Source: Eutreptiella sp. 'Long Island Sound 2002' (Eukaryota > Protista > Euglenida). From it: a stretch of 64,000 nucleotides of DNA. The stretch lies in contig OZ038379.1 in NCBI GenBank assembly GCA_964036045.1, positions 26,226,001 through 26,290,000 of the forward strand, written 5' to 3'. Shown here piece after piece: positions 9,348-29,900 of the stretch (position 1 is its first letter; each line of letters begins with the position of its first letter). Below the pieces are notes generated by a model. It was not told where the DNA came from, did no database searches, and saw only the letters and a program-made list of their open reading frames with translations. The translations under genes were made by a program, and so were the position numbers.

Positions 9348-10060
9348 TTTGGTACCAAGGGATGAGTCATCCTTGCTGTGTTTTGCCGTTCTTGTGCTTC
9401 GTTCATTGTGCCCTTTGCTCTTAGTGCTTGGACTTGGAGTACAGGTGTACTCTTAACGGAGTTACCTTCACATTCACGCCATGTCTAATCATGGGAGCAG
9501 GACTTGCAAAAATAGTGTGGAGTGTTTGGTACAAGAGGGACGAGTAGTTCCTTGTCTTTTTTTGCCGTTTGTGTGGTTATTCTTCCGTGCCCTTTGCTCG
9601 TAGTGAGTGGACTTGGAGTACAGGTGTACTCTTAACGGAGTTACCTTCACATTCACGCCAAGTATAAGAGGGACGAGTAGTTCCTTGTCGTGTTTTGCCG
9701 TTTGTGTGCTTTGTTCTTTCGTGCCTTTTGCTCTTAGTGATTGGACTTGGAGTACAGGTGTACTCTTAACGGAGTTACCTTCACATTCACGCCATGTCTA
9801 ATCATGGGAGCAAGAGTTGGTACAAGAGGGACGAGTAGTTCTTTGCCGTGTTTTGCCGTTTGTGTGCTTTGTTCTTCTCTGCCCGTTGCTCTTAGTGTTT
9901 GGACTTGGAGTACAAGTGTACTCTTAACGGAGTTACCTTCACATTCACGCCATGTCTAATCAAAAGGCAAGAGTTGCAACAATAGGCTGGAGTTTTTGGT
10001 ACAAGAGGGACGAGTAGTTCCCTGCTGTGTTTTGCCGTTTGTGTGCTTTGTTGTTCCACG
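9348..10060 (+). repeat. Tandem array of 134-179-bp units, each a degenerate copy of the RepHel leader and start (polypyrimidine-AG, hairpin, ATG)
   Basis: Hairpins at 9443, 9622, 9756 and 9914. Unit tail CACGCCATGTCTAATCATGGGAGCAGGACTTGCAAAAAT aligns with RepHel start CGCACCATGTCAAATCGCTGGGAGCACGAGTTGCAACAAT. A fifth partial unit runs to ~10060. Confidence 0.9.
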
Positions 10061-10135
10061 GGTACCAAAAGGTGAGGTTCCGTTTGGGCTGGAGTACTAG
10101 TGGGTAGGAATGGGGCTCATTCTTTGGGAGGATAG

Positions 10136-10284
10136 GTAAGGCCCATCAACGCAAAACAAGATACTGCCATCCGGTTGGGTTTGAGGCTGTACAAGTATAG
10201 GCGTCACCAACATTATCAATGATGCTTCTACCCCCAAAGTAGTCACTTTGTTTTTTCCCAACTAATGTTTTTTCTTGCTCTCAG
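10136..10284 (+). other. Putative 5'-UTR spliceosomal intron of the RepHel gene
   Basis: Donor AG/GTAAGG at 10136, branch-like ACTAAT at 10261, pyrimidine tract and CAG acceptor at 10284 (alternative at 10287). Confidence 0.55.
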
Positions 10285-10302
10285 CAGTTGGATGTGGAGT
10301 AT

Positions 10303-10327
10303 AGGTGTACTCTTAACGGAGTTACCT
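10303..10327 (+). promoter_or_regulatory. Conserved hairpin element upstream of the RepHel ATG
   Basis: AGGTGTACTCTTAACGGAGTTACCT; 14 nt between its ...TACC and the ATG at 10341. Confidence 0.8.
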
Positions 10328-10340
10328 TTTATTTCGCACC

Positions 10341-13300
10341 ATGTCAAATCGCTGGGAGCACGAGTTGCAACAATGCTTGGACACGGACATTGACTTCCCG
10401 GTGGCCGAGTTCATCAAGCTGCATAGCAAAATCCCCCCGCCTACCATCCGTCGGCGACATGCGCAGTTGCGCGCCACGCTGATGAAGCGATTGCAAAAGC
10501 GCGCCGCACTTGGGATCCAAGCATCGACGGTGGCAAGTTTGAACACTCCTGAGTCCCAAGCTGCCAAGGGGTCTTGTGGAGGCAAGAGGAACACCGCGGA
10601 GTCCCAAGCCGACAAGGGCAAAAACAACACCGCGGAGTCGCAAGCGGCCAAGGGGTCTTGTGGAGGCCAGAAGAACACCTCGGAGTCCCAAGCCGACAAG
10701 GGCAAGAAAAACACCGCGGAGTCCCAAGCGGCAAAGGGTTCAGCTGGAGGCAAGAAGAACACCGCGGAGTCGCAAGCGGCCAAGGGGTCTTCTGGAGGCA
10801 AGAAGAACACCTCGGAGTCCCAAGCCGACAAGGGCAAGAAAAACACCGCGGAGTCCCAAGCGGCAAAGGGTTCAGCTGGAGGCAAGAAGAACACCGCGGA
10901 GTCGCAAGCGGCCAAGGGGTCTTGTGGAGGCAAGAAGAACATCTCGGAGTCCCAAGCCGACAAGGGCAAGAAAAACACCGCGGAGTCCCAAGCCATCAAG
11001 GGCAAAAAGAACACCGCGGAGTCCCAAGCGGCCAAGGGTTCCTTCGGAGGCATAAACAACACGCCAGAATCGCAACGGAATAAGGGCATCGTTGGTGGAC
11101 ACGGCAATACGCCAGAGAAGCAGCACATCAAGGCATCGGGGCGTCGTCATTGCGGGGTCGTTCGTACAGTGTCTCGGGAGTTGTTCCGTGTTAATGCATC
11201 ATCGCCGTCCAACATTTCTTTGAAGTCAGTTCGAGAGTATTGGCTTGATGGTTTGGACACTTTGTACTCACCACTTTTTGATGCACTTTGCTACCGGTGT
11301 GGTCAACTCCTTTGGGGCCCAATAGGTGGGGGACACAAGTTTACGGTTCCACGCAATACTGACGAGATACGTACACAGACTTTGTTTGGCGTGCATCCCA
11401 CCGATTTGGTTACAAGTGGGATATTTGCATTCCGCAACGAGATGTTCGCCAATTACTTGAAGTACAAAAATGCACCGTTTCCAGTTCCCCCGCGATCTCC
11501 TGCACGTAGCACAAGTCGCTTTGTGGTGTATGACACTCCTGTTTGGCACTCCGCTACACGTATGTATGCTTGCCACGTTTGTAGCAAGTATTCCGCGAAG
11601 TATGACCCCATCAACTATGGCTACACTTTGGATGGGGACATCCATTACAATATCCCCTCAAAAATTGCGGACCTCACCGAGTACCAGAAGCGACAAATTG
11701 CACTTGGGGCCCTCTACTCAAATACGCTGAAGCACGTGGATCTTCGTCACAAGCAATGGCACCATGCAATTGGTACCGTTGGTGTCGGCCGCAAGCCAAG
11801 CCAACACTACAATGCACTTTATGGTTTCATGACAATGAAAGAGGATATTTTGCGCGATTACCAAAAGCCCAAGGACAGCAAGCAAAGCAACCGTCAAATG
11901 AACCAAGCGTTGTTGCTGCTCAAAAAAATTCACCCTTTTTATTCTCGATTCTTGGCGCACTATGAGACGTTGTACCGATACTTGGAGAATGCGGCCACCA
12001 CCATGGGCACATTGACACAGCGTTCGTATGAAGACAAGTACGGGAAACGCTTGGAATACCATTTACAAGATGAGTACGTTGCTTGGGCTGTGGAGTGTGA
12101 TGCCCCTCGGAACATCATTCCGGATTTTGCTCCTCACTCGGACAAAGTGGGCTTCCTCCATCGGACACCCTTCCAGGGAGCGGGTGGGAACGTGACCACG
12201 GCCGCTCAATCGTTGGCCAATGACACTTATTTGCATTTTAACGACCCCAAGTTGGAACCGTGTGTATGGCCTGATTTGTATCCTGGGGGCGTTGGTGGAT
12301 ATACCGTAGGTTGCGGCATTGGATGTGCTGCCTACTACCGTAGTCGTTATCTTGCCTTTGATAGCCGATGGCGTCGGGACCGGTGGTGGTCCTTTTTCCA
12401 AGTGAGCAAAGAGATGAAAAACCAATTGATTTGGAATCAACAAAATTTCAAGGCTCAACGTGCGGATCGGGCAGAGGACATTACTGCAGCACATTTGAGA
12501 AGTGCAAGGAGTTCAACTGGTCCGAAACCGGCGCCAAAGAAATCTACCTCACAATCACCACACACGTCCTCGGAGTGTCCGCAAGGAAGTCAATGCACCC
12601 AGCCGAGTCAATCTTCACAATCCGCAACCCAAAGCACCCAACACCCTCCATCTAGTTCCCAATATGCAGCAACGTCAACAACACCGCCATCAACTCAAGC
12701 TACCCGTCAAGGCAAAAAGCCGCGTGCATGCTACCAGGACGGTGTAAATTCTATGAACCACAATCTGGAGCGTGAGGGGACCGATAAAGGTACGGCCGAG
12801 CTCAACCCGTATTATCGGTATGGAACTTATGTACCTTCAAAATTGGTTGGAACCCGTTCTTATTGGGCCTCGCGACATTTAGATCTTACAGCCATGAGTC
12901 GTGAACTTGGCAAAGCGGACCTTTTCATCACGTTGACCATGAATGACAACTGGGCCGATTTGCAAGCTGCTGTGCAAAAAGGGTGCCGTGCAGGAGCTGT
13001 GTGGCCTGGAGAATACCCCACAAACACAGGGCCAAACAAGCCAATCCAAGATGGCCACGATATGGAGGCTTGTGTGGCGTTTCACAAGCGGGTGGAGATA
13101 TTCAAGCGAGAGTTCTTGGCTATTGGCAAAAATGGTCCATTTGGAAAGGTGCGGGATTATTGGTTTCGATTCGAATATCAAGAGCGAGGCCGGGTGCATT
13201 TGCATGGCGTGGTATGGTGTGAAGCCAACAGCATTCCGGACGATGTGGTTTGCGCAACAATGCCCCGTGAAAGTGACGGCTTTGATCCAAAGTTCACAGC

Positions 13301-13427
13301 ATACCTACGGGATCTGTACGAGGAGTGCAACATGGTGCATCAATGCTACCCCGACAAGTGTTTCAATATTGGTCGTGGGCGTGTATGCACCAAGTGCAAG
13401 TCAGGTTATCCCTTTAGTGTGCCGTAG
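10341..13427 (+). CDS. Helitron RepHel, 5' part (SQ-rich repeat, Cys motifs, Rep motifs 1-2); ends at an in-frame TAG
   Basis: 1028-aa ORF with DLFITLTMND-x-W (Helitron Rep motif 1) and RFEYQERGRVHLHGVVW (HUH motif 2, ~13197-13205). The frame continues into the next ORF. Confidence 0.9.
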   Translation: MSNRWEHELQQCLDTDIDFPVAEFIKLHSKIPPPTIRRRHAQLRATLMKRLQKRAALGIQASTVASLNTPESQAAKGSCGGKRNTAESQADKGKNNTAESQAAKGSCGGQKNTSESQADKGKKNTAESQAAKGSAGGKKNTAESQAAKGSSGGKKNTSESQADKGKKNTAESQAAKGSAGGKKNTAESQAAKGSCGGKKNISESQADKGKKNTAESQAIKGKKNTAESQAAKGSFGGINNTPESQRNKGIVGGHGNTPEKQHIKASGRRHCGVVRTVSRELFRVNASSPSNISLKSVREYWLDGLDTLYSPLFDALCYRCGQLLWGPIGGGHKFTVPRNTDEIRTQTLFGVHPTDLVTSGIFAFRNEMFANYLKYKNAPFPVPPRSPARSTSRFVVYDTPVWHSATRMYACHVCSKYSAKYDPINYGYTLDGDIHYNIPSKIADLTEYQKRQIALGALYSNTLKHVDLRHKQWHHAIGTVGVGRKPSQHYNALYGFMTMKEDILRDYQKPKDSKQSNRQMNQALLLLKKIHPFYSRFLAHYETLYRYLENAATTMGTLTQRSYEDKYGKRLEYHLQDEYVAWAVECDAPRNIIPDFAPHSDKVGFLHRTPFQGAGGNVTTAAQSLANDTYLHFNDPKLEPCVWPDLYPGGVGGYTVGCGIGCAAYYRSRYLAFDSRWRRDRWWSFFQVSKEMKNQLIWNQQNFKAQRADRAEDITAAHLRSARSSTGPKPAPKKSTSQSPHTSSECPQGSQCTQPSQSSQSATQSTQHPPSSSQYAATSTTPPSTQATRQGKKPRACYQDGVNSMNHNLEREGTDKGTAELNPYYRYGTYVPSKLVGTRSYWASRHLDLTAMSRELGKADLFITLTMNDNWADLQAAVQKGCRAGAVWPGEYPTNTGPNKPIQDGHDMEACVAFHKRVEIFKREFLAIGKNGPFGKVRDYWFRFEYQERGRVHLHGVVWCEANSIPDDVVCATMPRESDGFDPKFTAYLRDLYEECNMVHQCYPDKCFNIGRGRVCTKCKSGYPFSVP
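10542..11123 (+). repeat. Coding minisatellite: 14 units of 36 or 48 nt (NTAESQADKGKK / NTAESQAAKGSxGGKK)
   Basis: Read from the translation; the frame is preserved throughout. Confidence 0.92.
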
Positions 13428-16400
13428 GAGAGAGAAGAATTGGATGACAGTGGAGTCCGCTTGCTTTATCGCAGATATGAAGCCGAAGATGCATGTGTTG
13501 TTCCACACAATCGCCGATTGTTGGTTCGACTCCAGTGCCACAATAATGTGCAACGGATAACATCTTTGGGTTGGGAATTATATCTCGCCAAATATCTCAC
13601 AAAGCCAGCAAAGTCATTGACCGTGCCCATCACCATCTCGCCCGATGCAAGCGATGTGGAGCGTTTGCTCAAGTTGCGTTCATTGGGACGCATGGAGAAC
13701 GGCATGATGCTCTTAGGAATCCATCAATGTCGAGGTAGCCGAGAGGTGGTATGGATTCCTACAGATCCATGGCCTAAACTAGGACGGCTCAAGCGTCGAA
13801 AGCATCTCCCAGACGAAGATACGTCCACAGACGTTTGGTATTTGGATCGCTATGACCACTATTTGGAACGCCCCATTGCTGCCATACCCATCAAGTACCC
13901 CGACTACTATCGCTATTATCGCCGAACACAACGTGAACCCGGAGACTCCACGGCTATAGCAAGCAATCCAGCAGAGGACTTTGCATATGATTCTCCTTCT
14001 AGCGATTCCGATGATGCAGTGAGCGGAGATCGTTTTCAAGCCAACGTACGCCCCGATGAGGGCAATAAACCATATTGGTGGCCATCACCACCAGAAAAGT
14101 TGGAGAAGACATTCACGGACGAGGTGGGAAAAAAGTGGATTCTGCGAAGGCGAACTGCGATCCCAAGGTGGAACTTTTACGTCCCGTATGGAGAAGATGC
14201 AGAATTGTATTTCTTGCAAAAGATATTATTGTCACAGCCGTTAACAAAAGCAGACCACGAGCGGAAATTCCTTTCATCCAACAATGTCACTGAAACATAC
14301 ATGGAGGAGTGTATTCATCGAGGATTGTTTCGTGGTTATGAGGAAGAGGCAAGAGAAACTTTAAACAATGCCCAAGCACGTGGCTATTCCGTTGAGCGTT
14401 TGCGACTTCTTGCACAAGTTCTTATGGCCGAAGAGATCATAGACTCCACCTTCCTCAATACCTACATGTCCGATTTAGATGAGCTTGAAAAGCACCGGTT
14501 TGGAGAAGATGAGCCAGCAATGGCCGAGGAAGCTGAACTGGATCCCCAATTGGCGGAGGAGTTAAGGGCATTCATGGATGCTGACGACACGCGTGCAGCA
14601 GAGGCACTTGTGAATGCTTTGAACCAAGGGCAACGCCGGGTATTTGACATTTTTATTGCACATTTTCAACGGCAACCTCTTGAGAATGGTCCGGATATTT
14701 CCCCGCATTGCCGCACATCAAGTGGAAGTAGTGTTGCGCAATTGTGTGCTGTTCTCACAGGGGTTGCGGGAACCGGCAAGTCTTATGTCGTTCGCTTGCT
14801 AATTGCCAAGTTAAGAGCGCTTGGTTTCAGCATCCTAGTTTGTGGTTCTAGTGGGGTAGCCGCCCTAAATGTTGGAGGACGCACAATCCACAGCCTGTTC
14901 TCATTATCTTTGGACTTGGAGTGGCAAATAAAGGAAGGCACAACCTTGTGGTGGATGATTCGAACTGCCGATGTGATTATTGTCGATGAGTTCTCCCTCT
15001 TATCACACAAGCTCCTTCACACGCTCCATGATGTGCTACACAAGGTACGCCGCGACAAGCGCAATCCTTTTGGTGGCATTACAGTGCTCCTCGTAGGTGA
15101 TCCATTGCAACTACCCGCTGTTGATTTGGATATCTTTGACAGTGCACTCTTTCGAAACCATTTTGTTCCGTTTGTGCTGACGGACGTAATGCGCCAAGAC
15201 GATGCACATTTCATTAATTTGCTTAATCGTGTGCGGATTGGAGAGGAGAGTGACGAGGACCACTTAATTCCGCAGCAACGCATAGCGCTAAATTCCGATG
15301 TGTCACTACAAGACTTGGAGGATGCCCCCATGTTGGTTGGCCGTAGAAATGCTATGAACCGATGGAATGAACATTTCATGGCTCAATTGGGGTCAAGCAT
15401 TGTTACGTTCGATGCTAGCTACGTTGATATGGGTGGTGCCCCTACCAATCAAGCAATGTGCGACTATATCAATTCTCGCAATCGTCGTGTGCTGCCTCAG
15501 CAAGTGTGTGTCGCAGCGGGCATGAGGGCACGACTTATTCGCAATGTGTCCATCGAAAATCGACTCGTTAACTCGACACTTGTTGTGATCAAAAGATGGT
15601 CGAATGATGTCATTGTGGTAAGCCCGGTGGGGCACGCAAGGGAGTACCCCATCTGCCGTTTCCAGCAAATAATTCCGGTGTACGGCCCGTCCGTGCAAGT
15701 CAAAATAATCCAATTCCCTATGCTTCCCGGATACTCATGTACCGTGCACGGTACGCAGGGCTGCTCTTACGACCGCGTATGGGTGGACATGGCAGCTTTC
15801 TTTGCCGCAGCACACGCATATGTTGCTTTATCACGCGCACGTTCACTTCAAGGCCTATTCATCCTCAATTACCGTCGTGACGCTTTCCTTGTTGATCCGT
15901 ATTACGTGCAATTATGGGATTGGTTCGTGGCCACAAACGTGTTGTCTCCCAAACCACCCAGCCAAATCCCTCCTTATCCACGAAGAACATTTACAACATC
16001 ACTCATAATTGGAATTATGTGTGTCCATCGTGCTTGGAGTGTCGTAAGTCAACTCCCACAGCGGTTAGATGCTCGGATATTGAAGGTCAACATGCTCCAC
16101 ATTATCCAATATGTGTCATTTCCATACTGGTCGTATATTGAGAGACAATTGCGTGGAGACAAGCTGTCTTTGGACATTGATGATCTAAACGAGGATGGAA
16201 CGGAGCAAATCCGCAAACAAGGACGACCGGTTGGTGCTACAGGGCAACCGGCACAAGGCTTCAAACTATTGGACGCGTGTAATAACCCACGAGTGTTTGC
16301 GGCCCAAGACTTGGCTCAAATGTCGGTTGTGCAATTGCGGACATTGTGTGCTGCACATAAGCTATCAACTTCTGGAACCAAAGCCCAGTTTCAAGAACGC

Positions 16401-17924
16401 ATCCTACAAAAGCAAAACCACATTCAACCTCCATCATCTACACCAGCGCCTACACATTCACAAGGACCTGTACGACTGGTGCCGTCATCCATCAATGATT
16501 TCCCCCATTTGCAGCCACGACTTAATTACTTTGGAGAGGATTTTTGGCCACAAGAAAGAAGCGATACCACGGAGAACAATGTGCACTTATTGGAGAGTGC
16601 ATGGTTGTCTTGCGCAGCAGTGCAATGCTTACTAGAGGTCTTGTTGCCACAGGGCAATTCCTCGGTTAAGCCGGTCATCCAAGATGTGACATTGGCAGTA
16701 ATAATGCAACATCCTCCGACGTCGCGGGTTGTGTATACTCTGGGAGATGCCCTACCCGTACTACTCACCTCGCAGCACTCCACCGTTGGAGTTCACTACG
16801 TGTTGGTCACGGACATTTCCATTGTAGACAAGACCTTGGTTGTCCACGATCCTAAAGATAACGCATCTACCTGTGGCGCATGGTTCCGGGCAATTATGAG
16901 TAAAATGGGATGGTCTCTTACATGGCATCATTATGGAACTCAACCCGATTCCGATACATGTGGCTTCCGAGTCGTCATGCTCGCCATGCAATGGTGTCAG
17001 ACCAATCGACTCACCGGGCAACTGCCACGGTGGTTCTCGACGTATTGTGCAAGCGTTCTCCAGCTTTTTGCCGACGATACGAGGAGCTTGCGTTCTACGG
17101 TGAATACGTTTCAAGATTGGGCATATGAAGATGCTTTGAGAGAGTATGATGAACCAGTGGACTGGGCAATGACGGAGGGTGGGCCGCTTCCTACCGTCAC
17201 CAACAGCGACATGGAAGCTGCAATTCGCAACCCTCAATCCAATTCAGCAAGTGGTCCGTCTTCAACGTCCAAAGCGCCGCAGCCTCCGCATCCGTCAACC
17301 CGTAGGAAGAGTGGGACAAGTAAAGGGACTACGGGGGCAAACCCACAAACCACACCGGCACAGACCACTCCTACAAGAAAAATTCCAAAGTCAAAAAAGA
17401 CAAATATGCCTCCACGTACCCGAACTTGTGAGCCACCACCCTACCAATCGCACCGTCAACCACATCCCAAGAGTGGACACGAGGCCGACCAAAGTTCTCG
17501 CAAACATTCCTCAAAGAAGCGGTCATCCAACTCCGAGTCCGGGCCAAGGTCCAAGAAGAGTCGACCAGAGGACCACGAGCAGTCAAATACTAGACGCAAG
17601 AGATCCACTTCGAGCCGTCCTTCCGAATCAACAAGCCAAGAGCCGCCAACAGCAAAACAACGGCAAGAAAAAGCTCCGGTAAATCATGCTACACTATCCG
17701 AGAACGAGATCAAGAAGTGGTTAATCCTTATCACGGACGAAAATTTAAGTCGACGAAAACGCCGCGAGCATGCTTTGCACTTCTTGGGAGCCGCAGATAG
17801 TACCCTGGTAACATTACAGTACCGCACTCTCAGTCTCCAACTGCATCCCGACAAAAACCCGTCGGATGCACTAGCAAAGCAACGATTCCAAGTTCTTGGG
17901 TGTGCAAGAGACATGTTCCGTTAG
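13428..17924 (+). CDS. Helitron RepHel, 3' part: Rep motif 3, PIF1 helicase, SAP, Ulp1/C48-like protease, C-terminal J domain (10341-17924 = 2527 codons if fused)
   Basis: YLAKYLTK (catalytic Tyr motif, ~13581), GVAGTGKS, IIVDEFSLL, FGGITVLLVGDPLQLPAV, LTDVMRQ, TVHGTQG, YVALSRARSLQGL. SAP-like MSVVQLRTLCAAHKLSTSGTKAQFQERIL. Protease-like HYVLV...D...QPDSDTCG. J-domain YRTLSLQLHPDKNP...AKQRFQVL. Confidence 0.9.
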   Translation, partial: EREELDDSGVRLLYRRYEAEDACVVPHNRRLLVRLQCHNNVQRITSLGWELYLAKYLTKPAKSLTVPITISPDASDVERLLKLRSLGRMENGMMLLGIHQCRGSREVVWIPTDPWPKLGRLKRRKHLPDEDTSTDVWYLDRYDHYLERPIAAIPIKYPDYYRYYRRTQREPGDSTAIASNPAEDFAYDSPSSDSDDAVSGDRFQANVRPDEGNKPYWWPSPPEKLEKTFTDEVGKKWILRRRTAIPRWNFYVPYGEDAELYFLQKILLSQPLTKADHERKFLSSNNVTETYMEECIHRGLFRGYEEEARETLNNAQARGYSVERLRLLAQVLMAEEIIDSTFLNTYMSDLDELEKHRFGEDEPAMAEEAELDPQLAEELRAFMDADDTRAAEALVNALNQGQRRVFDIFIAHFQRQPLENGPDISPHCRTSSGSSVAQLCAVLTGVAGTGKSYVVRLLIAKLRALGFSILVCGSSGVAALNVGGRTIHSLFSLSLDLEWQIKEGTTLWWMIRTADVIIVDEFSLLSHKLLHTLHDVLHKVRRDKRNPFGGITVLLVGDPLQLPAVDLDIFDSALFRNHFVPFVLTDVMRQDDAHFINLLNRVRIGEESDEDHLIPQQRIALNSDVSLQDLEDAPMLVGRRNAMNRWNEHFMAQLGSSIVTFDASYVDMGGAPTNQAMCDYINSRNRRVLPQQVCVAAGMRARLIRNVSIENRLVNSTLVVIKRWSNDVIVVSPVGHAREYPICRFQQIIPVYGPSVQVKIIQFPMLPGYSCTVHGTQGCSYDRVWVDMAAFFAAAHAYVALSRARSLQGLFILNYRRDAFLVDPYYVQLWDWFVATNVLSPKPPSQIPPYPRRTFTTSLIIGIMCVHRAWSVVSQLPQRLDARILKVNMLHIIQYVSFPYWSYIERQLRGDKLSLDIDDLNEDGTEQIRKQGRPVGATGQPAQGFKLLDACNNPRVFAAQDLAQMSVVQLRTLCAAHKLSTSGTKAQFQERILQKQNHIQPPSSTPAPTHSQGPVRLVPSSINDFPHLQPRLNYFGEDFWPQERSDTTENNVHLLESAWLSCAAVQCLLEVLLPQGNSSVKPVIQDVTLAVIMQHPPTSRVVYTLGDALPVLLTSQHSTVGVHYVLVTDISIVDKTLVVHDPKDNASTCGAWFRAIMSKMGWSLTWHHYGTQPDSDTCGFRVVMLAMQWCQTNRLTGQLPRWFSTYCASVLQLFADDTRSLRSTVNTFQDWAYEDALREYDEPVDWAMTEGGPLPTVTNSDMEAAIRNPQSNSASGPSSTSKAPQPPHPSTRRKSGTSKGTTGANPQTTPAQTTPTRKIPKSKKTNMPPRTRTCEPPPYQSHRQPHPKSGHEADQSSRKHSSKKRSSNSESGPRSKKSRPEDHEQSNTRRKRSTSSRPSESTSQEPPTAKQRQEKAPVNHATLSENEIKKWLILITDENLSRRKRREHALHFLGAADSTLVTLQYRTLSLQLHPDKNPSDALAKQRFQVLGCARDMFR

Positions 17925-18158
17925 CTAACAAGTTGCCATACATGAGGCATTGTCTTTATATTATTTCTTCCAAACTCGCTAATGCTCCTTGTATGGCGCC
18001 CACCAACACGGAAAACTTCTTTTGCATGTATTACACATTTGTTTCATTCTTGCGTGCAATTGCGTGTCCTCTAAAATTGTAATTTTAATTAGCATTCAAA
18101 AGGTACGATTAACAGACTTGCAATCAATTCCGCTACATTGCAAATTTGACAAACCTAC

Positions 18159-20091: not shown

Positions 20092-20374
20092 TGTGCTTCC
20101 TTGATGCAATTGAATGCCTAATTCAATACATGTGTGCGACATGTCGTGCCACACTATATTATTCGTGCACTGCCGCCGCAATTGTGCAGTCGAATATGCA
20201 TTTCTTCCATACTTGAATGGTCCAAGAGCCTCCAACTTCATCAGATGATGATGCGTGTAGCGCTTCTCAATAGGCGAACATCAACATTCACGTGCTTCGT
20301 CCCTTTGCACATTTCACACAACAGTTCGGCCGCATGAGAGGTTCCGTTGCAGCTAGTTTTATCTTTGAATTTGT

Positions 20375-22398: not shown

Positions 22399-22570
22399 TT
22401 GCCACGCACATTGTGGTTCCATGCACTTACATGAATGATTTGCAAATGAAAGGGTGAAATTGGATTTGCTATGATTTTACCACAGTTAAGAGCTAAAGGG
22501 TTCCATATTCCGATTAATTAGAATCCGCAACACCGATCCGCAACAACAGCTCGAATATTTCAATTAACAC

Positions 22571-23045
22571 ACCACATCCATCCACGAGAGTGGATGTGGT
22601 GGGCGAAGCAGGCACCCGCTAGAGGGCTAGTAGCTTCACAGTGTCATAAGTGGACCTATCTCGTAGCGGAGAATTGCCTTCCGCGGGCCATCGCCACAAC
22701 GGCCGTCGAAATATGTCGACAGGGTTTCGGTGAACGCACGAAAGGAGGAACGCCGGCCGCCTCCCCCTCTACTTCAGAGGGCCGGCTTTTCTTCACACTG
22801 GGCTCCGAAACGACGGACCCAGCGCTCTGTTGGTCAGTGGGCCCGCACACAGAGCGCTCGGTACGTCGTTTCGGGGCCCTGCGCTCTGTTTGTCAGTGGC
22901 CTTGTTCGCAAGTGACAACAGAAAAATTCCTCCATGGGCGCATGGAGGGGGCCATTACCCACAACGAGGGCCCGGTGAGACTCGTTGTATGGGAGTTATT
23001 GTCCATGCGGCGATGGCAACAGGGTAAGTCCGCTCGCTACGGAAG
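22571..23045 (+). ncRNA. Unassigned highly structured GC-rich segment (structured RNA or single-strand DNA origin)
   Basis: At least 7 consecutive stems, including ACCACATCCA/TGGATGTGGT (22571-22600) and a ~29-bp interrupted stem (22800-22879). No credible ORF. Strand assumed from G-U wobbles and gene orientation. Confidence 0.5.
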
Positions 23046-23169
23046 AAACACCAAAATTTGTTGCCATTGCTTTTTGGATAATAACTAATGTTTACTTGAC
23101 TACCTTGCAAAAAAAGTACATACAAACAGTCGTACACAACGTTGTGCGCGTGCCTCGAGAAAACTTACA

Positions 23170-23823
23170 GTAACATCTCGTTTACAAAGCAGTTGTACTC
23201 GTAACGGGGTTACCTTCACTTATTTTTCATATCATTTCAGACCATCCATGGCAAAGAAAATAGATATACAAACACAATCACTCAAAAAAATGGTAATCCA
23301 TTTTCCAAATCGTAAAGTGAACATTGCGTTATGACAGCAGGTGTACTCTTAACGGAGTTACCTTCAATAACTTTCCATGTCATTTCAAACCGTTCCTCAT
23401 GAACCACGTTGTGCTTCCATCTTTTCCCTCACTTCATTCATGCTCGACTTCCATGGCACCCGTCAAGGTGTACCCTTAACGGGGTTACCTTCAACAACAA
23501 GGGTGACGTTCCATTTAATGAAGCAAACACTCGTATCACTTGCCACCCGCATTTTTATTTGCTTGCACAGGGGGCATGATTCACTGATGATTCAACGACA
23601 CTTCCTCCATTATCTAAAGCAAAAACTGGAATCATTTGCTACTTCCGAAAGCCTGCAACTTCGCCGCATGATGTTGTATGTAGAGTCAACGTTCACTTGC
23701 ATTGACCAATTGCTATAAAAATACGATGAGACATTTCACACATGAATTCCACCACATCAAAATTGGCGTGTCAAATGTTCGTATCATTTGCCACGCACAG
23801 GTGTACTCTTAACGGAGTTACCT
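23170..23823 (+). repeat. Third, more diverged hairpin cluster upstream of the helicase gene
   Basis: Motifs at 23191, 23339, 23466 and 23799. Flanks such as ATCCATTTTC...GTGAACATT are homologous to the 18.2-19.0-kb higher-order repeat. Confidence 0.85.
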
Positions 23824-23836
23824 TCTCTATTACAAA

Positions 23837-26800
23837 ATGCATCCTGCAAATTCGTTCACATTGGCCAAGGTTCAGTCACTACAAGAAGCAGCAATGACGG
23901 CTACGCTTATTATGGCCAAGGAAAACACAGCAAAGCAAGAATTGACCTTCACGGGCGAGTTCAAAGGTTCGTCAACATGGATCACGACATGGGGCCGCTT
24001 CGAATTCGCCGAAGATGACCACATCCGTCTACATCCAGAACCACATTGCCAAGGCCAAGTGCCTTACGAAGGAAAGATCACAACAACATCTGACGATGTT
24101 GCACATGTGACGGTGGACAACGTGTGGGGCATCCCAACGGGGTTATACAGTTTGGAATACGTCCCGGACATGATGCCTGCCGAGTGGGTCAAAGGTGCGC
24201 TAGAATTTTCACCTGAGCCTTAGCATACATTGCAAGTGTTGGCGTCAGGAAGCAATAACAAGCCACTCAACCCCATATCCGAAGACACCATCCAAGCCGT
24301 TGCAGCAGATCTCAAATTGGAACCGTCCCAATGTTTCGCCCTACAGACCGCCATGCGTTCAAAGGTGTGGGCATCCCAACTCCTCATATGCTCCCCAACA
24401 ATGCTCTCCAGCATATCAATTCCTGTTCGTTTCGCGTATTACAACCATTACTATACCCGGTTAAATAATCAAGGCGTCCCCGAATTCCATGCCATTCTCA
24501 ATCTCCTACTCATTCCCTATGTGTTGCAGGTGACTGCCATAATGGGGCCCGCCGGTTGCGGTAAATCCCATGTTTCCTTGGCCATCATGCAAGCGCGTTT
24601 CCTTGCAGCGCAACGCGTGTTGGTCACAGGTCCTACGAACACTTTGGTGGACAATTTGTGCGATGCCTGGGCGACAACCAGCGGTCTCACCGGTCCAGCA
24701 ATCGTTCGATTGTACTCCAAGATTCAACACGATTCCGGAAAAGCAAATGAACTGTACTGTGCCCATGCACTCGCCGTAAGATACCAATTGACAGTGAAGG
24801 AAGTGTTGCACAACGCAACCTTCGTATTCGCAACTAACGCCCTTGCCTTGTCACCCTCTCTACAGGGCGATTTTCACCACCACATTGTTGATGAAGCCGG
24901 ACGCACCAATATCCCTATGGGCATAGCGCTCACAGCATGTGCAAAAAACATCACCTTCATTGGTGATTCAAATCAGTTACATCCCCACACAAACCTTGAA
25001 AAGCATTACGCAAATGAGCTTGAATTAACAACAGAGGACATGTCACGCCTCATCGATGACAGCAAAATAAGCATCTTGCATATGTGTGCAGCAGGTTTGG
25101 TTCCACATGCATGCATCATAGAGCAACATAGGATGAACAAGCGCTTGACGGATTTCATCAATACATTTTTTTGCGGACTTATGGTCGGTTCGGGAGGAGG
25201 ACAAGAGCCCTCTTACACACTGCCAAACAAATCATGCATCAAACTTATCGACACATCAGCCAATGCTGCATTCGTCCCAGTCGATGAACTTTTCAATCTT
25301 ACCTGTTCCGCATTCCAACCTCGTGTTGCCACTTCCGCGTTTTCGAGTATTGCAGCTCGCCACGTGAATGACGTCTTGCATTACGCACAGAACGATTGGC
25401 CAAAAGGCAGTGTTGCTATCATTAGCAATCACTACGAGCAAAATCGCTTGAACAAAGCGCTATTTTCTTCCCATGAGTCCGTGTCCGCCATTGACACTTT
25501 AGGTAGGTTCCAGGGAAGTCAAGCCGATGTCGTCATACTAACCTTGGCTTCCATTCATCCAGGTTTCTTTACCGAAACCACACGACAGTATGTCGCTAGT
25601 TCGCGCGCGCGTCAAGCATTGATCATTATTGGTGAGATCGCGAAATGGAAAGCGCATCAACAGATTCGCCCACTATTTGAGGCCTTGGAGGCAATGCAAC
25701 AAAACGCTTCATTGCCCACCACCCGCGTACACACACTTGCGGCCTTGCCCAAATTCGTGGACAACGCATGTTCCAACGATTGGGTCGTTTGTCGATGGTC
25801 TCCCATGAACGATTGCTGTATGCACGGAACCCTCTATCATGACACCATCATGTCGTCCATTCAAGCATCCCTTCACAATCATTTCAATTCATACTTCACG
25901 GTGAAATTCGGACGCATCCTTCTGCCCGACTGTAGCTGGTTGTTTACCAATATATTGGCCTTTCCTGTACCCGATGTTCCACAATACCAGTCCCTTATTG
26001 ACAGCATGGATGCTGCAGTCTTTCACAATGTAGAATGTCGCCAACTATATGACTGGGAGAGGGAGATTCTACGGGAGATCCCACGAAACTTCCGCAAGAC
26101 TCTCACCCGTCAAAATAAGCGTTACACACTTACAGTACAGTTGGTCCAAGCTCTGTACCACAATTTCTTCACCAAATGCCGTTCCGCATTCCACCATAAT
26201 CTCCTCACTCATTTATACGGATTGCTTCCGCAGCATGGTACATGTGATCAAACCACCCACACCCATGGCTCAAACATCTCTTCCACCATTTGCACTTGGT
26301 GCCATGTGCTTCCAACACCATCACTGTCAAGCCAAATCACAGGCTACAATGCCCCACAAGTGCAGGCCGACCTCATTCACACCTTCATTACAGACGTGGC
26401 CGCAGATGTAACATACTTTGAGCCAACAAAGATTGCCGTGGGATGTCCTTTACAATTTTTCAAGATGGCAAGGGAATTTCTTCCGTTTACCAAATGGCAA
26501 ATGAACGATGATAAGGATCATCGAGGCTTCCCCGGTGGTGGCCGTAGTGTGCAAACAACCCCTCAAATTGCGAAGCTCTTTACACAACTTAACCTGCAAT
26601 CGGGTAATGCCATTTTTCGCAATGTTTTCAATGACACAACTGCAAGTGCAAAGCCTCACATCGATTCTGATTGTTTCCAACGCAATAGGACTTTCCTATG
26701 GCACTTTGGACCTCCTAGCTACCTACGCTGGGGAAATTCGAAGTACCCACTGGAACACGCTGCATTGTATGCTTTTGATGCTGCATGCACTCATTCCGTC

Positions 26801-26845
26801 CCGTTGATGGGTCGTTATAGTTTGTCTATTCGCTCGTGGAACTAA
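23837..26845 (+). CDS. UPF1/DNA2-type SF1 helicase fused to a C-terminal AlkB-like 2OG-Fe(II) oxygenase (1002 codons, one in-frame TAG at 24221-24223)
   Basis: ORFs 23837-24223 and 24230-26845 share one frame. Helicase motifs MGPAGCGKS, VLVTGPTNTLVDNL, IVDEAG, IGDSNQL, EQHRM, FQGSQAD, YVASSRARQAL. C-terminus RNVF...PHID...THSVP...RYSLSIR matches the AlkB N...HxD...H...RxSxxxR pattern. Confidence 0.8.
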
Positions 26846-26932
26846 GCGTCCATGGCATGCACGATGGTGTTGTTGTCCTCGCTTTGGTGGTCGCAGTGAA
26901 CCAACAAGCAACATATTATTGTCGGCTACATG

Positions 26933-27331
26933 CGGTGGTGGCCGTATTGTGCAAATAACCCCTCAAATGGCGAAGCTCTTTACACAACTTCACCTGCAGT
27001 CAGGTAATGCCTTTTTTCGCATTGTTTTCAATGACACAACTGCACGTGCGAAGCCTCACATCGATTTCGATTGTTTCCAACGCAATAGGACTTTCCTATG
27101 GCACTTTGGACCTCCTAGCTACCTACGCCGGGGAAATTCAAAGTACCCACTGAAACACGCTGCATTGTATGCTTTTGATGCTGCATGCACTCATTCCGTC
27201 CCGTTGATGGGTCGTTATAGTTTGTCTATTCGCTCGTGGAACTAAGCGTCCATGGCATGCACGATGGTGTTGTTGTCCTCGCTTTGGTGGTGACAGTGAA
27301 CCAACAAGCAACATATATTGTCGGCTACATG
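26933..27331 (+). pseudogene. 400-bp tandem duplicate of the AlkB-domain 3' end and 3' flank (copy 1 = 26533-26932)
   Basis: ORF 26919-27245 repeats GGGR...RYSLSIRSWN with a few substitutions; offset is 400 nt. Confidence 0.9.
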
Positions 27332-28251
27332 ACAAATCATATGGAGCACATTATATCTCGGGTTGCACGACCCATCAACACTGAGTCAATGCATGACACA
27401 ATCAGAGAATTTTTGCATGCCGCCGTGCGGTGCCTCTTTTCGCTTGCGTGCTACTCAGTGGCCTTTGCAATATTGTTTTCTACATTTCCCAACAATGGTG
27501 TCCCTTGACCGGCATAGCAACCATCAATTCAATCAAACCAATCCTTTGGCGACATCATTGCCAAATTCCATCACTCACTCACTCACATATATGTGCCATA
27601 GTATGCTGCAGTAAGCTTCCGGGAGCAAGTGCACTCTTATCAATGTTATCTTCCCTTCAAAATGACCTCACACATTCGATCGTGACAATGACCAGCACAC
27701 CCCTCCTAACTTGCAAGCAATCTTGACTTCCATCATACATGACAATTTGTTCCGATAAACAATCCGTCCAGGGGTGATCAATTGTTTGATTCATCACTAT
27801 ATAATCAATGCCCCGCACCAAAAAAACGTTGCACCATTACCCAATACACAAGTACGATGCTTTTCCACCCATCAAGCCCAAAGCTTTCGCCACAATTGGT
27901 CATCGACGCCGCTTTCATTGCCATGATGCGACATGATTCCACAAACAATGGTACTATGCACCATTCAACAAATTCCCAAAAGAATCATAAAGGGTAGGCG
28001 TACAAATCCGTCACTATAACCTCCATGATGCGATCCAAGTCAACATACCAATTTCACATGCAAGTGAAGTCTCCTGCACGTCACGTCAAAACAACACCCT
28101 AGCCACCGTTTCCATGCGGTACACTCCAAGTTTTACAAAGGGTCCATTGACCAAATTGTTTCACGGCCTATTGCACCATCCATACACGTCAGCCAAGCCC
28201 ATCTTCCAGCCACAACAGGAATTTCAAGCAACCACTTCCTTTCATCAGTCC

Positions 28252-28453
28252 CAGGATGCTCAAATTAGGGCGTGAAGTCATCAACGCCTTCACTCCATTG
28301 CATTTCGCATTCATTTGTCTTGCTAGGTGTATTCTTAACGGAATTATCATCTCAGGATGCTCAAATTAGGGCGTGAAGTCATCAACGCCTTCACTCCATT
28401 GCATTTCGCATTCATTCGTCTTCCTAGGTGTATTCTTAACGGAATTACCGTCA
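28252..28453 (+). repeat. 101-bp tandem duplication containing the hairpin (28325, 28426) upstream of the F-box gene
   Basis: CAGGATGCTCAAATTAGGG... begins at both 28252 and 28353. Confidence 0.92.
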
Positions 28454-28462
28454 CTACAAAAT

Positions 28463-29707
28463 ATGGACAATACTTCAACCTACGGCGAGCCAAGCAACTA
28501 TCACCCACAATGTATGCCCTGCGTCAAGAACACACAAAATCGTCAAATGAAACGCAATATCAAGATTGCCATGGTCACGACGCCAACATCATTGCGAGAT
28601 TTCCCGAAGGATCTCATGTTGCTAATCGCAGAGTACGCACAGCAAATAACCTCACTCAGCAAGTTGTGCAAAAGCATGTGGATAATGCTCCATGGTTCGC
28701 GCATCATGAACACCGACGCATGGAATTGGGTGACGAAGGATTTCAAACGTATGATTAATGTGCGTCACCTCATGGCTCACTTCAACGACAATACGTTCGC
28801 CTCACTCATTGCGGCAAAGGAATATATTGACAACCTCAACTCCGGTTTCTTCGTCGGTTTGTGCGATCTAATGTTGTGGAGCGATATATCCGGACCATAT
28901 GCAAGCACTGCAATACGGGCAATTAACACAACATTGCGCTCCTCATCACGTACACTGCACACCCTAAATTTATCCTGCTACATGCCGTCCTTGTGCGCCT
29001 CGGTCATGGCAGAGAACCTATTGAATTGCACATCTCTCACAACTTTGGCTCTGAGTTTGCGCATCGCAAAAAATGAAGACGGGTTGGTAACTTTTATGGA
29101 CGATAACACATCTAATCGCCTCTTGAAAGACGTTTTCTGTAAAGGCATGCATATGCTTAATTTCCTCCACCTCGATCTCTCCTCTGGGTCCATCACAAAT
29201 AGTGGTGCATGCGCGTTGGCAAATGAATTGTGCAACGCGCAAACACTTACCCACATGCATCTGGACCTAGGTTACAACCATATAGGTCCACTTGGGGTGG
29301 CCTCTTTATTTCGTTTGATGGGACAATATAAAAAGCTGCAAAGTTTCTATTTGAACGTCTGTGCAAATCAGAAGTGGGGGACCCAAAATGAATTGGCCAA
29401 ACCCTTTTACATCCGAGAACTTGCAACCACTTTGTGTTCCATTCAACTGGATTTCCAAGACATTGGTCTTGTTGACCATAGTGTGATTGACCTCGTCAAC
29501 ACCTTGGTTAACAAATGGAATCCGCAAGTGTTGCAACAAAGCAACACATCCGCACTGCTTTAGCTAAATCTTCTCTACAATTATAATATTGATATGGCGG
29601 GGGTTTGTGCATTGCAAGTGCTAGTAGACCACTTTGCCGTTGACGTGCATACAACAATTTCATGTGATGCATTCGATTCACCCCATTTGTACAGCGACGA
29701 CGACTAG
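28463..29707 (+). CDS. F-box + RI-like LRR protein (TAG at 29561-29563; frame and LRR pattern continue to TAG 29705-29707)
   Basis: F-box-like LRDFPKDLMLLIAEY...LSKLCKSMW. LRRs FLHLDLSSGSITNSGACAL and MHLDLGYNHIGPLGVASL, and after the TAG LNLLYNYNIDMAGVCAL. The ATG is 13 nt after the hairpin. Confidence 0.75.
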
Positions 29708-29823
29708 GTCCTTCGTCGGCAATTCTATGCAATTTAAAGCCAGTTCCCTTCAATTCCAAACTTTTGTAGTAGCAAAGTGTTCCAACCAGTTCAGGTTGCC
29801 ATCCGTGGGAGTTCCCAATGCAA

Positions 29824-29900
29824 TGGTGTACTGCTAACGGAATTACCATCACCTTCATGCCATGTCTAAACCTTGGGAGGAAGGGTTACAACTGTTTCTT
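29824..29900 (+). other. Terminal hairpin followed by a diverged second RepHel start (MSKPWEEGLQLFL), truncated
   Basis: TGGTGTACTGCTAACGGAATTACC + ATCACCTTCATGCCATGTCTAA resembles the left-array tail TTCACATTCACGCCATGTCTAA. The peptide aligns with RepHel MSNRWEHELQQCL. Confidence 0.6.

What the first reader, a model, noticed from the sequence alone, without database searches (positions are those of the whole stretch)
9443..29848. One covarying bulged hairpin sits 12-14 nt before every start codon of the element
Seen: AGGTG(T)ACTC-TTAACG-GAGTTACCT, 31 copies, all on +. Spacing from ...TACC to ATG is 14 (10341), 12 (19270, 21304), 14 (23837), 13 (28463) and 14 nt (29862). Compensatory changes: ACTC/GAGT to ATTC/GAAT (19234, 21268, 28325, 28426) and to ACCC/GGGT (23466); G-U-type ACTC/GGGT at 18824, 20883 and 23191. 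It usually begins at an AG preceded by pyrimidines (TCTTTCTAG/GT, TCTTCCTAG/GT), like a splice acceptor. Inference: the unequal arms, covariation and wobbles favour a single-stranded structure. It could be a 5'-UTR operator (topology like an iron-responsive element: lower stem, single bulge, upper stem, hexaloop, but a different sequence), a Rep-bound ssDNA site, or a promoter palindrome.
Basis: partly seen in the sequence, partly recalled or inferred. Interest (0 to 1): 0.93.

Follow-up and report, generated by a model that had tools for sequence, protein, structure and literature searches.

The report
Transposon leader hairpin before each gene
A 22-kb rolling-circle transposon (Helitron) in a Euglena-like alga carries the same small bulged hairpin in front of each of its genes, and the way it varies suggests it acts as folded sense-strand RNA, probably controlling translation or processing of the transposon's messages.

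Summary
A covariance model finds exactly 31 copies in the window plus one decayed copy, all on the + strand and none in the host flanks. Another 77 lie in related loci of the same genome, always inside Helitron copies and in gene orientation.

The element (8201-30130) is a multigene Helitron in a euglenid-like alga. A sharply bounded 28-nt block is conserved.

- **Position:** only 6 copies precede real ORF starts (12-14 nt), 5 precede pseudo-starts and 20 stand in arrays.
- **Spacing:** in the sister family it is 12, 34 and 70 nt, so it is not universal.
- **New here:** in RepHel leaders of both families the hairpin is the tip of a 35-40-bp G.U-rich helix that pairs the start codon with upstream leader. 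As sense RNA it folds at -41.5 kcal/mol (z -6.3), antisense -25.2, as DNA about -13. So the block is transcribed and shaped as sense RNA.

Best reading: a transposon-specific leader operator or processing signal (confidence 0.5). It is not an IRE, not the Helitron terminal hairpin, and matches no Rfam family. A promoter palindrome and a Rep-bound ssDNA site remain rivals.

The parts
8201..30130 (+). The whole element: a multigene Helitron copy lying between two (AT)n tracts
   Evidence: Ends fixed by comparison with L007, where two copies lie head to tail. RepHel domains found.
8201..9348 (+). 5' non-coding region of the element, with 162-nt repeats; the first ~30 nt of the family's 5' end are missing
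   Evidence: 95% identical to L007:15846-17000, which follows an element end. Repeats.
9349..10340 (+). Array of about 4.5 leader units (134-179 nt), each a copy of the RepHel leader with hairpin and pseudo-start. Hairpins at 9444-9466, 9623-9645, 9757-9779, 9915-9937
   Evidence: Each unit folds into the long helix.
10272..10364 (+). Long leader helix of RepHel, with the conserved hairpin at its tip; the start codon and first codons pair with upstream leader
   Evidence: Sense RNA -41.5 kcal/mol, z -6.3. Antisense -25.2. As DNA -13.2/-11.9. Shared with the sister family.
10304..10326 (+). Hairpin copy 14 nt before the RepHel ATG
10341..17924 (+). RepHel gene (Rep nuclease, PIF1-type helicase, SAP and DnaJ domains); reading frame interrupted once by an in-frame stop, no frameshift seen
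   Evidence: Pfam. Relatives L004 and L007 read through as one ORF.
18187..19006 (+). Array of 10 hairpin copies, many 53 nt apart, beginning 263 nt after the RepHel stop
19235..19257 (+). Hairpin copy (ATTC/GAAT variant) 12 nt before the ATG of zinc-ribbon gene 1; that ATG pairs with upstream leader in the predicted fold
19270..20091 (+). Gene for a 273-aa protein with a weak GRF-type zinc-ribbon match, copy 1
   Evidence: No solved relative.
20520..21040 (+). Array of 7 hairpin copies: the second copy of a 2.03-kb tandem duplication
21269..21291 (+). Hairpin copy 12 nt before the ATG of zinc-ribbon gene 2
21304..22125 (+). Zinc-ribbon gene, copy 2
23192..23214 (+). Lone hairpin copy with a U.G wobble in the upper stem
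23340..23718 (+). Hairpin copy (23340-23362), a 14-nt spacer, then a 113-aa ORF of unknown function whose start resembles the RepHel start
23467..23489 (+). Lone hairpin copy with the compensatory ACCC/GGGT upper stem
   Evidence: -12.5 kcal/mol.
23800..23822 (+). Hairpin copy 14 nt before the ATG of the SF1 helicase gene; no outer helix here
23837..26845 (+). SF1 (DNA2/Upf1-like) helicase gene. Interrupted once by an in-frame stop; one in-frame extra segment of about 57 codons relative to L011
   Evidence: Pfam, PDB. L011 reads through as one ORF.
27628..27650 (+). Decayed hairpin copy 11 nt before the ATG of a decayed short ORF
   Evidence: 18.2 bits. Sequence. The counterpart L009:14001 is better kept.
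28326..28348 (+). Hairpin copy in the first unit of a 101-nt tandem duplication
28427..28449 (+). Hairpin copy (ATTC/GAAT variant) 13 nt before the ATG of the LRR gene
28463..29563 (+). Gene for a 366-aa leucine-rich-repeat protein
29825..29847 (+). 3' copy of the hairpin with a broken upper stem, followed 14 nt later by a pseudo-start (29862) and about 1.3 leader units
   Evidence: Same state in L007:15490.
29848..30130 (+). 3' terminal region of the element. Its last ~20 nt are the inverted repeat of the family's 5' end

Best explanation
The motif is a cis-acting RNA element of one lineage of multigene Helitrons in a euglenid-like alga.

Shown:
- A 28-nt block is conserved at every position and bounded sharply by unconserved flanks.
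- On the sense strand it folds into a 5-bp lower stem with an invariant G.U, one bulged U, a 4-5-bp upper stem and a 4-6-nt loop.
- One copy lies in the leader of every ORF of the element. More copies stand in arrays between genes, and one follows the last gene.
- In the RepHel leaders of both families, in the sister family's helicase leader and, weakly, in the window's zinc-ribbon leaders, the block is the tip of a much longer G.U-rich helix. That helix pairs the start codon and first codons with upstream leader.

Inferred:
- Both arms of that helix flank the block and the helix carries the signature of RNA pairing. The block is therefore transcribed as part of the sense RNA and is not merely a site upstream of the transcription start.
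- The invariant tip is the recognition site for one trans-acting factor, host- or element-encoded.
- The helix beneath it gates access to the start codon. All genes of the transposon then answer to one post-transcriptional switch.
- The intergenic and 3' copies act as extra binding sites, or as processing or stability marks in a long, possibly polycistronic, precursor. This is the logic of iron-responsive elements, but not their sequence.
For: - **Specificity:** 31 + 1 copies in the window and 108 strong copies in 286 kb of window plus loci. All are inside Helitron copies and in gene orientation, and none is in host DNA.
- **Constraint:** the block diverges 2-7 times more slowly than its flanks within repeat classes (0.026 against 0.142 per site in the largest class). 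Between classes it diverges 0.14 against 0.70.
- **Pairing of the small hairpin:** 92.9% of cells are paired, and 5 of 9 pairs show changes on both sides. No shuffle of 500 reaches the observed score, and slid controls give 35-52% pairing. The G.U is invariant in 52 of 52 distinct rows.
- **Independent compensatory events:** C-G to U-A (zinc-ribbon and LRR leaders), U-A to C-G (23467), U-A to C-G in the lower stem (L008:9336), and G-C to C-G (sister family).
- **Long helix:** z-scores of -5.6 to -6.3 as sense RNA. In 19 of 20 modules the sense strand folds better than the antisense, by 9.3 kcal/mol on average, with 7-10 G.U pairs against 1-3.
- **Type of mismatch:** in strand-neutral arm alignments there are 30 sense-wobble against 11 antisense-wobble mismatches, p = 0.004.
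- **DNA control:** as DNA the same stretches fold at only -12 to -15 kcal/mol, with no strand difference.
- **Conservation across families:** the outer helix is kept across both families at 91-100% pairing, with many one-sided G.U changes. The A and G of the start codon are paired columns.
- **Decay together:** the one decayed ORF start has a decayed hairpin.
Against: - There are no transcript data, so RNA 5' ends, splicing and translation are all inferred.
- Twenty array copies far from any ATG are not needed by an operator model.
- The window's helicase and LRR leaders show no outer helix.
- The spacing to the ATG is 12-14 nt in the window's family but 34 and 70 nt in the sister family, so spacing as such is not essential.
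- Loop and stems are equally conserved, which a protein-bound duplex site would also show.
- The copies are related by descent, so the covariation rests on about four events. The wobble excess is carried mainly by RepHel-type modules that share ancestry.
- Template switching at quasi-palindromes can create paired changes without selection (established knowledge).
- The window's own copy has two interrupted genes and may be dead.
Confidence: 0.5

Rival explanations
1. The block is a duplex-DNA promoter or enhancer element. It would be an imperfect palindrome bound by a transcription factor or the initiation machinery, with transcription starting just downstream at the conserved T-T-C-A. The arrays would be reiterated binding sites, as in many transposon promoters.
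For: - Every position of the 28-nt block is conserved, loop included, and three conserved bases extend past the stem.
- Arrays of up to 10 copies lie upstream of genes, and about 30 leader units lie upstream of RepHel in L008.
- The block is always upstream of ORFs and in their orientation.
Against: - The outer helix needs both flanks of the block in one RNA, so at least some transcripts start well upstream of it.
- Compensatory changes, the invariant G.U and the bulge are not expected of a symmetric protein site.
- Departures from symmetry are biased to the sense-strand wobble type.
- No sequence-specific DNA-binding domain other than SAP was found in the element's proteins.
- A copy also follows the last gene.
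Confidence: 0.2
2. The hairpin forms in the displaced single DNA strand of the rolling-circle intermediate. It would be a Rep (HUH nuclease) recognition, pausing or priming site, like the subterminal hairpins of IS200/IS605 elements or the single-strand origins of rolling-circle plasmids.
For: - All copies are on the strand that carries RepHel, which in studied Helitrons is the transferred strand (established knowledge).
- Bulged imperfect hairpins are what HUH enzymes read.
- The tip is conserved over variable long stems, as in plasmid single-strand origins.
- Three rearrangement junctions (a 2.03-kb duplication, a 101-nt duplication and a 25-nt deletion) lie within 0-2 nt of the 3' edge of a copy.
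Against: - The real ends of the element are elsewhere and have a different sequence. The nearest copy is 283 nt from the 3' end.
- Thirty-one such sites in one element would fragment it.
- As DNA the small hairpin is worth only -3.4 kcal/mol and the long helix about -13, with no strand preference.
- The tie to ORF starts, and the pairing of start codons, has no role in this model.
Confidence: 0.12
3. The block marks the acceptor site for spliced-leader trans-splicing, which euglenids are known to use. The 'AG' at its start would be the acceptor, and the hairpin would present or hide it.
For: - The host is euglenid-like.
- 'AG' is present at the first bases in about 85% of context-distinct copies.
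- Good pyrimidine runs precede the zinc-ribbon and LRR copies.
- A copy after the last gene would fit coupled 3'-end formation, as in trypanosomatids (established knowledge; not shown for euglenids).
Against: - In the sister family's RepHel leaders the G is replaced by C, with a compensating change on the partner strand. No AG lies between the pyrimidine run and the block.
- Array copies lack pyrimidine runs.
- Acceptor use would remove the upstream arm and does not explain the conservation of the loop.
Confidence: 0.1
4. There is no function for the element. The block would be a recently amplified repeat kept uniform by gene conversion, and the long inverted repeats would be by-products (template switching) or fodder for the host's small-RNA silencing.
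For: - Many copies are tandem or segmental duplicates.
- Weak sub-threshold matches of the long hairpins to microRNA-precursor models.
Against: - The block is kept between two families whose DNA is only about 70% identical and whose flanks are unalignable.
- The bounds of conservation are sharp.
- The imperfections (bulge, G.U) are themselves invariant, whereas template switching would perfect the palindrome.
Confidence: 0.06

Closest known systems
Iron-responsive elements and their binding proteins (vertebrate ferritin / transferrin-receptor mRNAs)
   Same: A small hairpin with lower stem, single bulged base on the 5' strand, short upper stem and small loop. One copy sits in the 5' leader of several different mRNAs, and there are multi-copy arrays in untranslated regions. 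One factor could thus govern a set of genes.
   Different: The loop and bulge bases are different. No match to the Rfam model. Here the hairpin caps a long helix that contains the start codon. The setting is a transposon in a protist, and no binding protein is known.
Helitron 3'-terminal hairpin (termination signal of rolling-circle transposition)
   Same: A hairpin carried by a Helitron on the RepHel strand and conserved within a family.
   Different: The canonical one is single, lies 10-20 nt from the 3' end and is read as DNA. Here there are 31 internal copies tied to ORF starts, the nearest is 283 nt from the end, and the pairing has an RNA-type signature.
Subterminal imperfect hairpins of IS200/IS605 elements and origin stem-loops of Rep-encoding ssDNA replicons
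   Same: Strand-specific imperfect hairpins with an extrahelical base, read by HUH nucleases of the same superfamily as the Helitron Rep.
   Different: Those lie at element ends or at a single origin and direct cleavage. Here the copies are not at the ends, are many, and are weak as DNA.
Single-strand origins (ssoA type) of rolling-circle plasmids
   Same: A long imperfect palindrome with a short conserved sequence at the tip and variable stems, which works in one orientation only.
   Different: One per plasmid, non-coding, and read as DNA by RNA polymerase. Here the helix includes the start codon and codons of genes and is G.U-rich.
RNase III processing hairpins between the early genes of phage T7
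   Same: Bulged hairpins placed just upstream of successive cistrons of a same-strand gene array, and one after the last gene. They punctuate a polycistronic RNA.
   Different: A bacterial virus, with no conserved tip sequence. Cleavage is not shown here.
Pr77 hallmark at the 5' end of trypanosomatid retroposons (recalled from the literature, not tested here)
   Same: A short 5' block shared by several transposon families of Euglenozoa. It acts in the transposon's own expression and also folds as RNA.
   Different: It is found in retroposons, once per element, and as a ribozyme fold. No Rfam ribozyme model matches here.

Membership tests
Iron-responsive element (Rfam IRE models) | Match to the curated covariance model | tested here: not met
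   No hit at gathering score in the window. No hit up to E = 10 in 18100-19300 or 9300-10450.
Iron-responsive element (Rfam IRE models) | The family's conserved six-base loop and bulged C on the 5' strand (established knowledge) | tested here: not met
   The loop here is TTAACG (or the four bases TAAC after a U.G pair) and the bulged base is U. Only the topology is alike.
Helitron 3'-terminal hairpin | A single hairpin within 10-20 nt of the element's 3' end | tested here: not met
   The 3' end is at about 30130. The nearest copy ends at 29847, and there are 31 copies in all.
Rep origin stem-loop of ssDNA replicons | One origin per replicon, with a conserved loop of about nine bases that holds the nick site | tested here: not met
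   The loop has 4-6 bases and there are 31 copies. Nicking itself is not testable with these tools.
Rep origin stem-loop of ssDNA replicons | Stable folding of the single DNA strand | tested here: inconclusive
   -3.4 kcal/mol for the small hairpin and -13 for the long helix, with z between -1.2 and -2.7.
Eukaryotic Helitron (the element as a whole) | A RepHel protein: Rep nuclease domain followed by a PIF1-type helicase | tested here: met
   Helitron_like_N at 3e-25 and PIF1 at 3e-28. Relatives carry both domains in one ORF.
Eukaryotic Helitron (the element as a whole) | The canonical short terminal bases of classical Helitrons, with no terminal inverted repeats | tested here: not met
   At the head-to-tail junction in L007 the two ends are inverted repeats of each other over about 14 nt and do not show the classical end bases. 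This resembles what is described for the Helitron2 group (from memory, not tested).
Eukaryotic Helitron (the element as a whole) | Insertion at an A-T step | tested here: inconclusive
   Both ends abut (AT)n tracts. No empty site was available.
Spliced-leader acceptor site | An AG preceded by a pyrimidine run, kept wherever the signal is kept | tested here: not met
   The sister family's RepHel leaders have AC with a compensating partner change. Pyrimidine runs occur only at two gene types.
Myb-type DNA site (a lead from memory) | A conserved core in all functional copies, and a Myb/SANT protein to read it | tested here: not met
   The bases concerned differ between the two families. No Myb/SANT domain is found in any protein of the element at E up to 1.
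Known self-cleaving ribozymes and microRNA precursors (Rfam) | Match at the gathering score | tested here: not met
   Only sub-threshold hits of 15-22 bits to microRNA-precursor models.

The most novel reading that the evidence does not exclude
The hairpin is the punctuation mark of a transposon-borne 'operon'. The Helitron would be transcribed as one long sense RNA. The conserved tip would be read by a single factor, possibly one of the element's own helicase or zinc-ribbon proteins, or by the small ribosomal subunit itself. That reading would open the start-codon helix and start translation internally at each cistron, or cut the precursor there. This would give a DNA transposon its own post-transcriptional regulon in a eukaryote. 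The 12-14-nt spacing in the window's family is about the distance from the P site to the mRNA exit of the 40S subunit (an inference from established footprint data).
Probability: 0.15. Interest if true: 0.85.

Novelty: new variant of a known kind. Interest (0 to 1): 0.62.

Why it matters
Helitrons are known for capturing genes, but how a multigene Helitron expresses its cargo is unknown. Gene expression signals in euglenids are also almost uncharted.

Here one short structured signal is reused before five kinds of genes, in arrays and after the last gene. It is conserved across two families that are otherwise about 70% identical. That gives a concrete, sequence-defined handle on both questions.

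If the RNA reading is right, this is a transposon-wide post-transcriptional switch that also hides the transposase start codon. It would be a built-in brake or trigger for transposition. It would also be a new structured RNA family for Rfam-type libraries.

Tried and rejected
- **Rfam.** I searched at the gathering score over the window and in E-value mode over three stretches. Nothing was usable.
- **Pattern scans.** The motif pattern gave no match in IMG/VR viral contigs or in JGI metagenome contigs. A protein-guided scan of JGI metagenomes for Rep relatives gave none. The family is so far seen only in one ENA assembly.
- **Exact-protein look-up.** The LRR ORF is not on record.
- **Host identification from window flanks.** This gave only LRR fragments. 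It was solved instead through a light-harvesting gene next to a related copy. The wide protein search with that gene added nothing on taxonomy because of its length window.
- **Element-encoded sequence-specific binder (Myb idea).** No such domain was found.
- **Distant family as a test of an equivalent hairpin.** L001 and L005 have none before the ATG. They repeat leader plus start in inverted orientation instead.
- **Hairpin as element terminus.** Rejected once the true ends were found.
- **Outer-stem count per copy against shuffled flanks.** This control is too permissive to use copy by copy. I relied on z-scores and strand comparisons instead.
- **Literature.** No paper in the held library links Euglena and Helitrons in substance.


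Full report
**What is there.** The 14-nt core of the motif occurs 29 times with up to two mismatches, always on the + strand, between 9449 and 28445. Shuffles give 0.18. A looser 23-mer search and a covariance model built from 52 distinct copies both return 31 copies in the window, at 30-56 bits. One decayed copy lies at 27628-27650 (18 bits). No other place in the 64 kb reaches 14 bits. The quoted spacings to ATG and the quoted variants are correct, with coordinates one base off.

**What the element is.**
- The + strand ORFs encode a RepHel protein: Helitron_like_N at 3e-25 and PIF1 helicase at 3e-28, with SAP and DnaJ domains at the C end.
- They also encode a duplicated small protein with a weak GRF zinc-ribbon match, an SF1 helicase distantly like the DNA2 helicase domain, and a leucine-rich-repeat protein.
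- Close relatives of RepHel come only from one ENA metagenome assembly with megabase contigs.
- A light-harvesting gene beside one copy has the polyprotein layout. Its best solved relatives are the Euglena gracilis PSI antenna proteins. The host is therefore a euglenid-like alga.
- In L007 two copies lie head to tail. This fixes the ends of the window's copy at about 8201 and 30130, between two (AT)n tracts. It also shows that the two ends are inverted repeats of each other.
- The hairpin is not part of either end.
- In the window's copy RepHel is interrupted once by an in-frame stop. The SF1 helicase gene is also interrupted once by an in-frame stop, and it carries one in-frame extra segment relative to L011. 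Relatives read through.

**Where the copies sit.** Six copies lie 12-14 nt before the ATG of an ORF: RepHel, two zinc-ribbon genes, a 113-aa ORF, the helicase gene and the LRR gene. Five lie before pseudo-starts. Four of these are in the tandem leader units at 9349-10340 and one follows the last gene. Twenty stand in arrays, often 53 nt apart, or alone, with no ATG at that distance. The decayed copy precedes a decayed ORF by 11 nt.

So every start codon has a copy, but most copies have no start codon. In the sister family (about 68% protein and 70% DNA identity) a plain element has two copies, one 12 nt before the RepHel ATG and one about 65 nt after its stop. In L011, a sister-family element with accessory genes, the copies lie 70 and 34 nt before the zinc-ribbon and helicase ATGs. 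The spacing is thus a trait of the window's family, not of the motif. A third, more distant family (59% protein identity) has no such motif.

**Conservation.** Among 26 copies with unrelated flanks, information content jumps from background to 1.2-2.0 bits at position -1. It falls back after position +26. Loop, bulge and stems are alike in this. Within repeat classes the block diverges 2-7 times more slowly than its flanks. Between classes it diverges 0.14 against 0.70 per site. In 286 kb of window plus eleven loci, all 108 strong copies are inside Helitron copies and in the orientation of their genes.

**The small hairpin.** No shuffle of 500 reaches the observed values, and slid controls pair at 35-52%.

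Counting events rather than copies, I see four compensatory doubles:
- C-G to U-A, shared by the zinc-ribbon and LRR leaders, which also share their first codons;
- U-A to C-G at 23467;
- U-A to C-G in the lower stem of L008:9336;
- G-C to C-G in the sister family's RepHel leaders.

U.G intermediates occur at least three times. One G.U in the lower stem and the bulged U never vary. As RNA the sense strand folds at -8 to -12.5 kcal/mol and the antisense at -4 to -7. As DNA both fold at about -3.

**The long helix (new).** Folding 105-110 nt around the copies shows that the small hairpin is often the tip of a 35-40-bp imperfect helix.

| Leader | Sense RNA (kcal/mol) | z-score |
|---|---|---|
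| Window RepHel | -41.5 | -6.3 |
| L011 RepHel | -40.1 | -6.2 |
| L011 helicase | -43.8 | -5.6 |
| L011 zinc-ribbon | -32.5 | -6.0 |
| Sister-family 3' copy | -35.5 | -3.5 |

- The outer stems of the L011 accessory genes have sequences unrelated to those of RepHel.
- In the RepHel modules the outer helix is shared by both families and by 5' and 3' copies. Pairing is 91-100%, with many one-sided changes through G.U. The A and the G of the start codon are paired columns.
- The ATG is also paired in the L011 helicase leader and in the window's zinc-ribbon leader.
- The window's helicase and LRR leaders show no such helix.

**Which strand, which molecule.**
- In 19 of 20 modules the sense strand folds better than the antisense, by 9.3 kcal/mol on average. 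For the window's RepHel leader the values are -41.5 against -25.2. The sense strand has 7-10 G.U pairs, against 1-3.
- In arm-to-arm alignments that favour neither strand, 30 transition mismatches are of the sense-wobble type and 11 of the antisense type (p = 0.004). The excess is carried by RepHel-type modules that share ancestry, so this is suggestive rather than final.
- With DNA parameters the same stretches give -12 to -15 kcal/mol on either strand, with z about -2.
- A duplex palindrome decaying freely should show no strand bias, and a DNA hairpin should gain little from G.T. The pattern is that of RNA.
- Both arms flank the block, so the RNA that forms the helix contains the block. At least part of the transcription therefore starts upstream of it.

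**Mechanism.** I take the block to be a leader element of the sense RNA. It has an invariant tip that one factor recognises. Beneath it, where present, lies a helix that hides the start codon. Shown: position, strand, conservation, covariation, the long helix and its RNA signature. Inferred: the factor, the effect on translation or processing, and the role of arrays and of the 3' copy as extra sites in untranslated or intergenic RNA. Euglenids use spliced-leader trans-splicing (established knowledge), so a long same-strand gene array could be one precursor. I could not test this.

**Rivals.**
- *Promoter palindrome.* It explains the arrays and the full-length conservation. It does not explain the outer helix, the strand bias or the invariant imperfections.
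- *Rep-bound or priming site on single-stranded DNA.* It fits the strand, the bulge and three rearrangement junctions that fall at the 3' edge of a copy. But the true ends are elsewhere, the DNA folds are weak, and the tie to start codons has no place in it.
- *Splice acceptor.* It fails in the sister family, where the G of the 'AG' is a C with a compensating partner change.
- *Neutral repeat.* It is hard to square with sharp conservation across two families.

**Comparison with the known.** The topology and deployment recall iron-responsive elements, but the loop, the bulge and the Rfam model do not match. It is neither the Helitron terminal hairpin nor a Rep origin by the tests in the membership table. 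No Rfam family, viral contig or JGI metagenome contig holds it. The held literature does not describe Helitrons in euglenids. I rate it a new variant of a known kind, a cis-regulatory leader hairpin, here owned by a transposon.

- Note 1 was written before I saw that the pieces belonged to single genes. It lists the coordinates of the ORF pieces of the two interrupted genes, which gives away where they are interrupted.
- Neither is used in this report, and nothing was deleted.
- While reasoning I also recalled a few short consensus motifs of known systems from memory.

Noticed in passing
window 7685-8242 and 30100-30245; L007:15780-15850: The element's two ends are inverted repeats of each other over about 14 nt, and both abut (AT)n tracts of 244 and 51 units. 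This is unlike classical Helitron ends and recalls the Helitron2 group. The window's long copy lacks the first ~30 nt of the 5' end.
   Followed up: partly
window 6507-7712 and 7888-7912: A short (1.2 kb) non-autonomous copy with the family's 5' region and 3' end sits just upstream, also in an AT tract. A solo inverted end fragment lies inside the long AT tract.
   Followed up: partly
window 18316/20375, 28349/28350, 20990-21018: The junctions of a 2.03-kb tandem duplication, of a 101-nt tandem duplication and of a 25-nt deletion all fall within 0-2 nt of the 3' edge of a hairpin copy. In L009:9117 another junction falls at the 5' edge.
   Followed up: partly
window 16140-17924: RepHel ends in a SAP domain and a DnaJ (J) domain. 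These additions are shared by both families and by the distant family.
   Followed up: no
window 10551-11062: Coding tandem repeats of 48, 84 and 132 nt inside the N-terminal part of RepHel, encoding a lysine-rich repeated peptide.
   Followed up: no
window 26533-27331: A 400-nt tandem duplication (95% identical) spans the 3' end of the SF1 helicase gene.
   Followed up: no
window 18225-18262 and the other array copies preceded by ...ATGCAG: A six-codon mini-ORF starts just before the hairpin, runs through its 5' arm and stops at the TAA in the loop.
   Followed up: no
L008:260-9990: About 30 leader units (period 721 nt, two hairpins each) are amplified upstream of one RepHel copy, forming a satellite-like array of long hairpins.
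   Followed up: partly
L005:690-916 and 9056-9281; L001:190-240 and 7685-8321: The distant family has no hairpin motif. Instead it repeats its leader plus the first ~128 nt of RepHel in inverted orientation 3' of the gene, next to 81-nt tandem repeats.
   Followed up: partly
L008:22171-23159; L011:1572-4878: Host light-harvesting genes with a polyprotein layout. Their nearest solved relatives are Euglena gracilis LHCI chains, at roughly 55-60% identity over the aligned parts.
   Followed up: partly
window 47454-53209, minus strand: ORF fragments with leucine-rich repeats in the host flank, probably exons of a host LRR gene.
   Followed up: no
window 22594-23088: A G+C-rich 164-aa ORF inside the element has no hairpin before it and no family match. 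It may be an inserted repeat rather than a gene.
   Followed up: no
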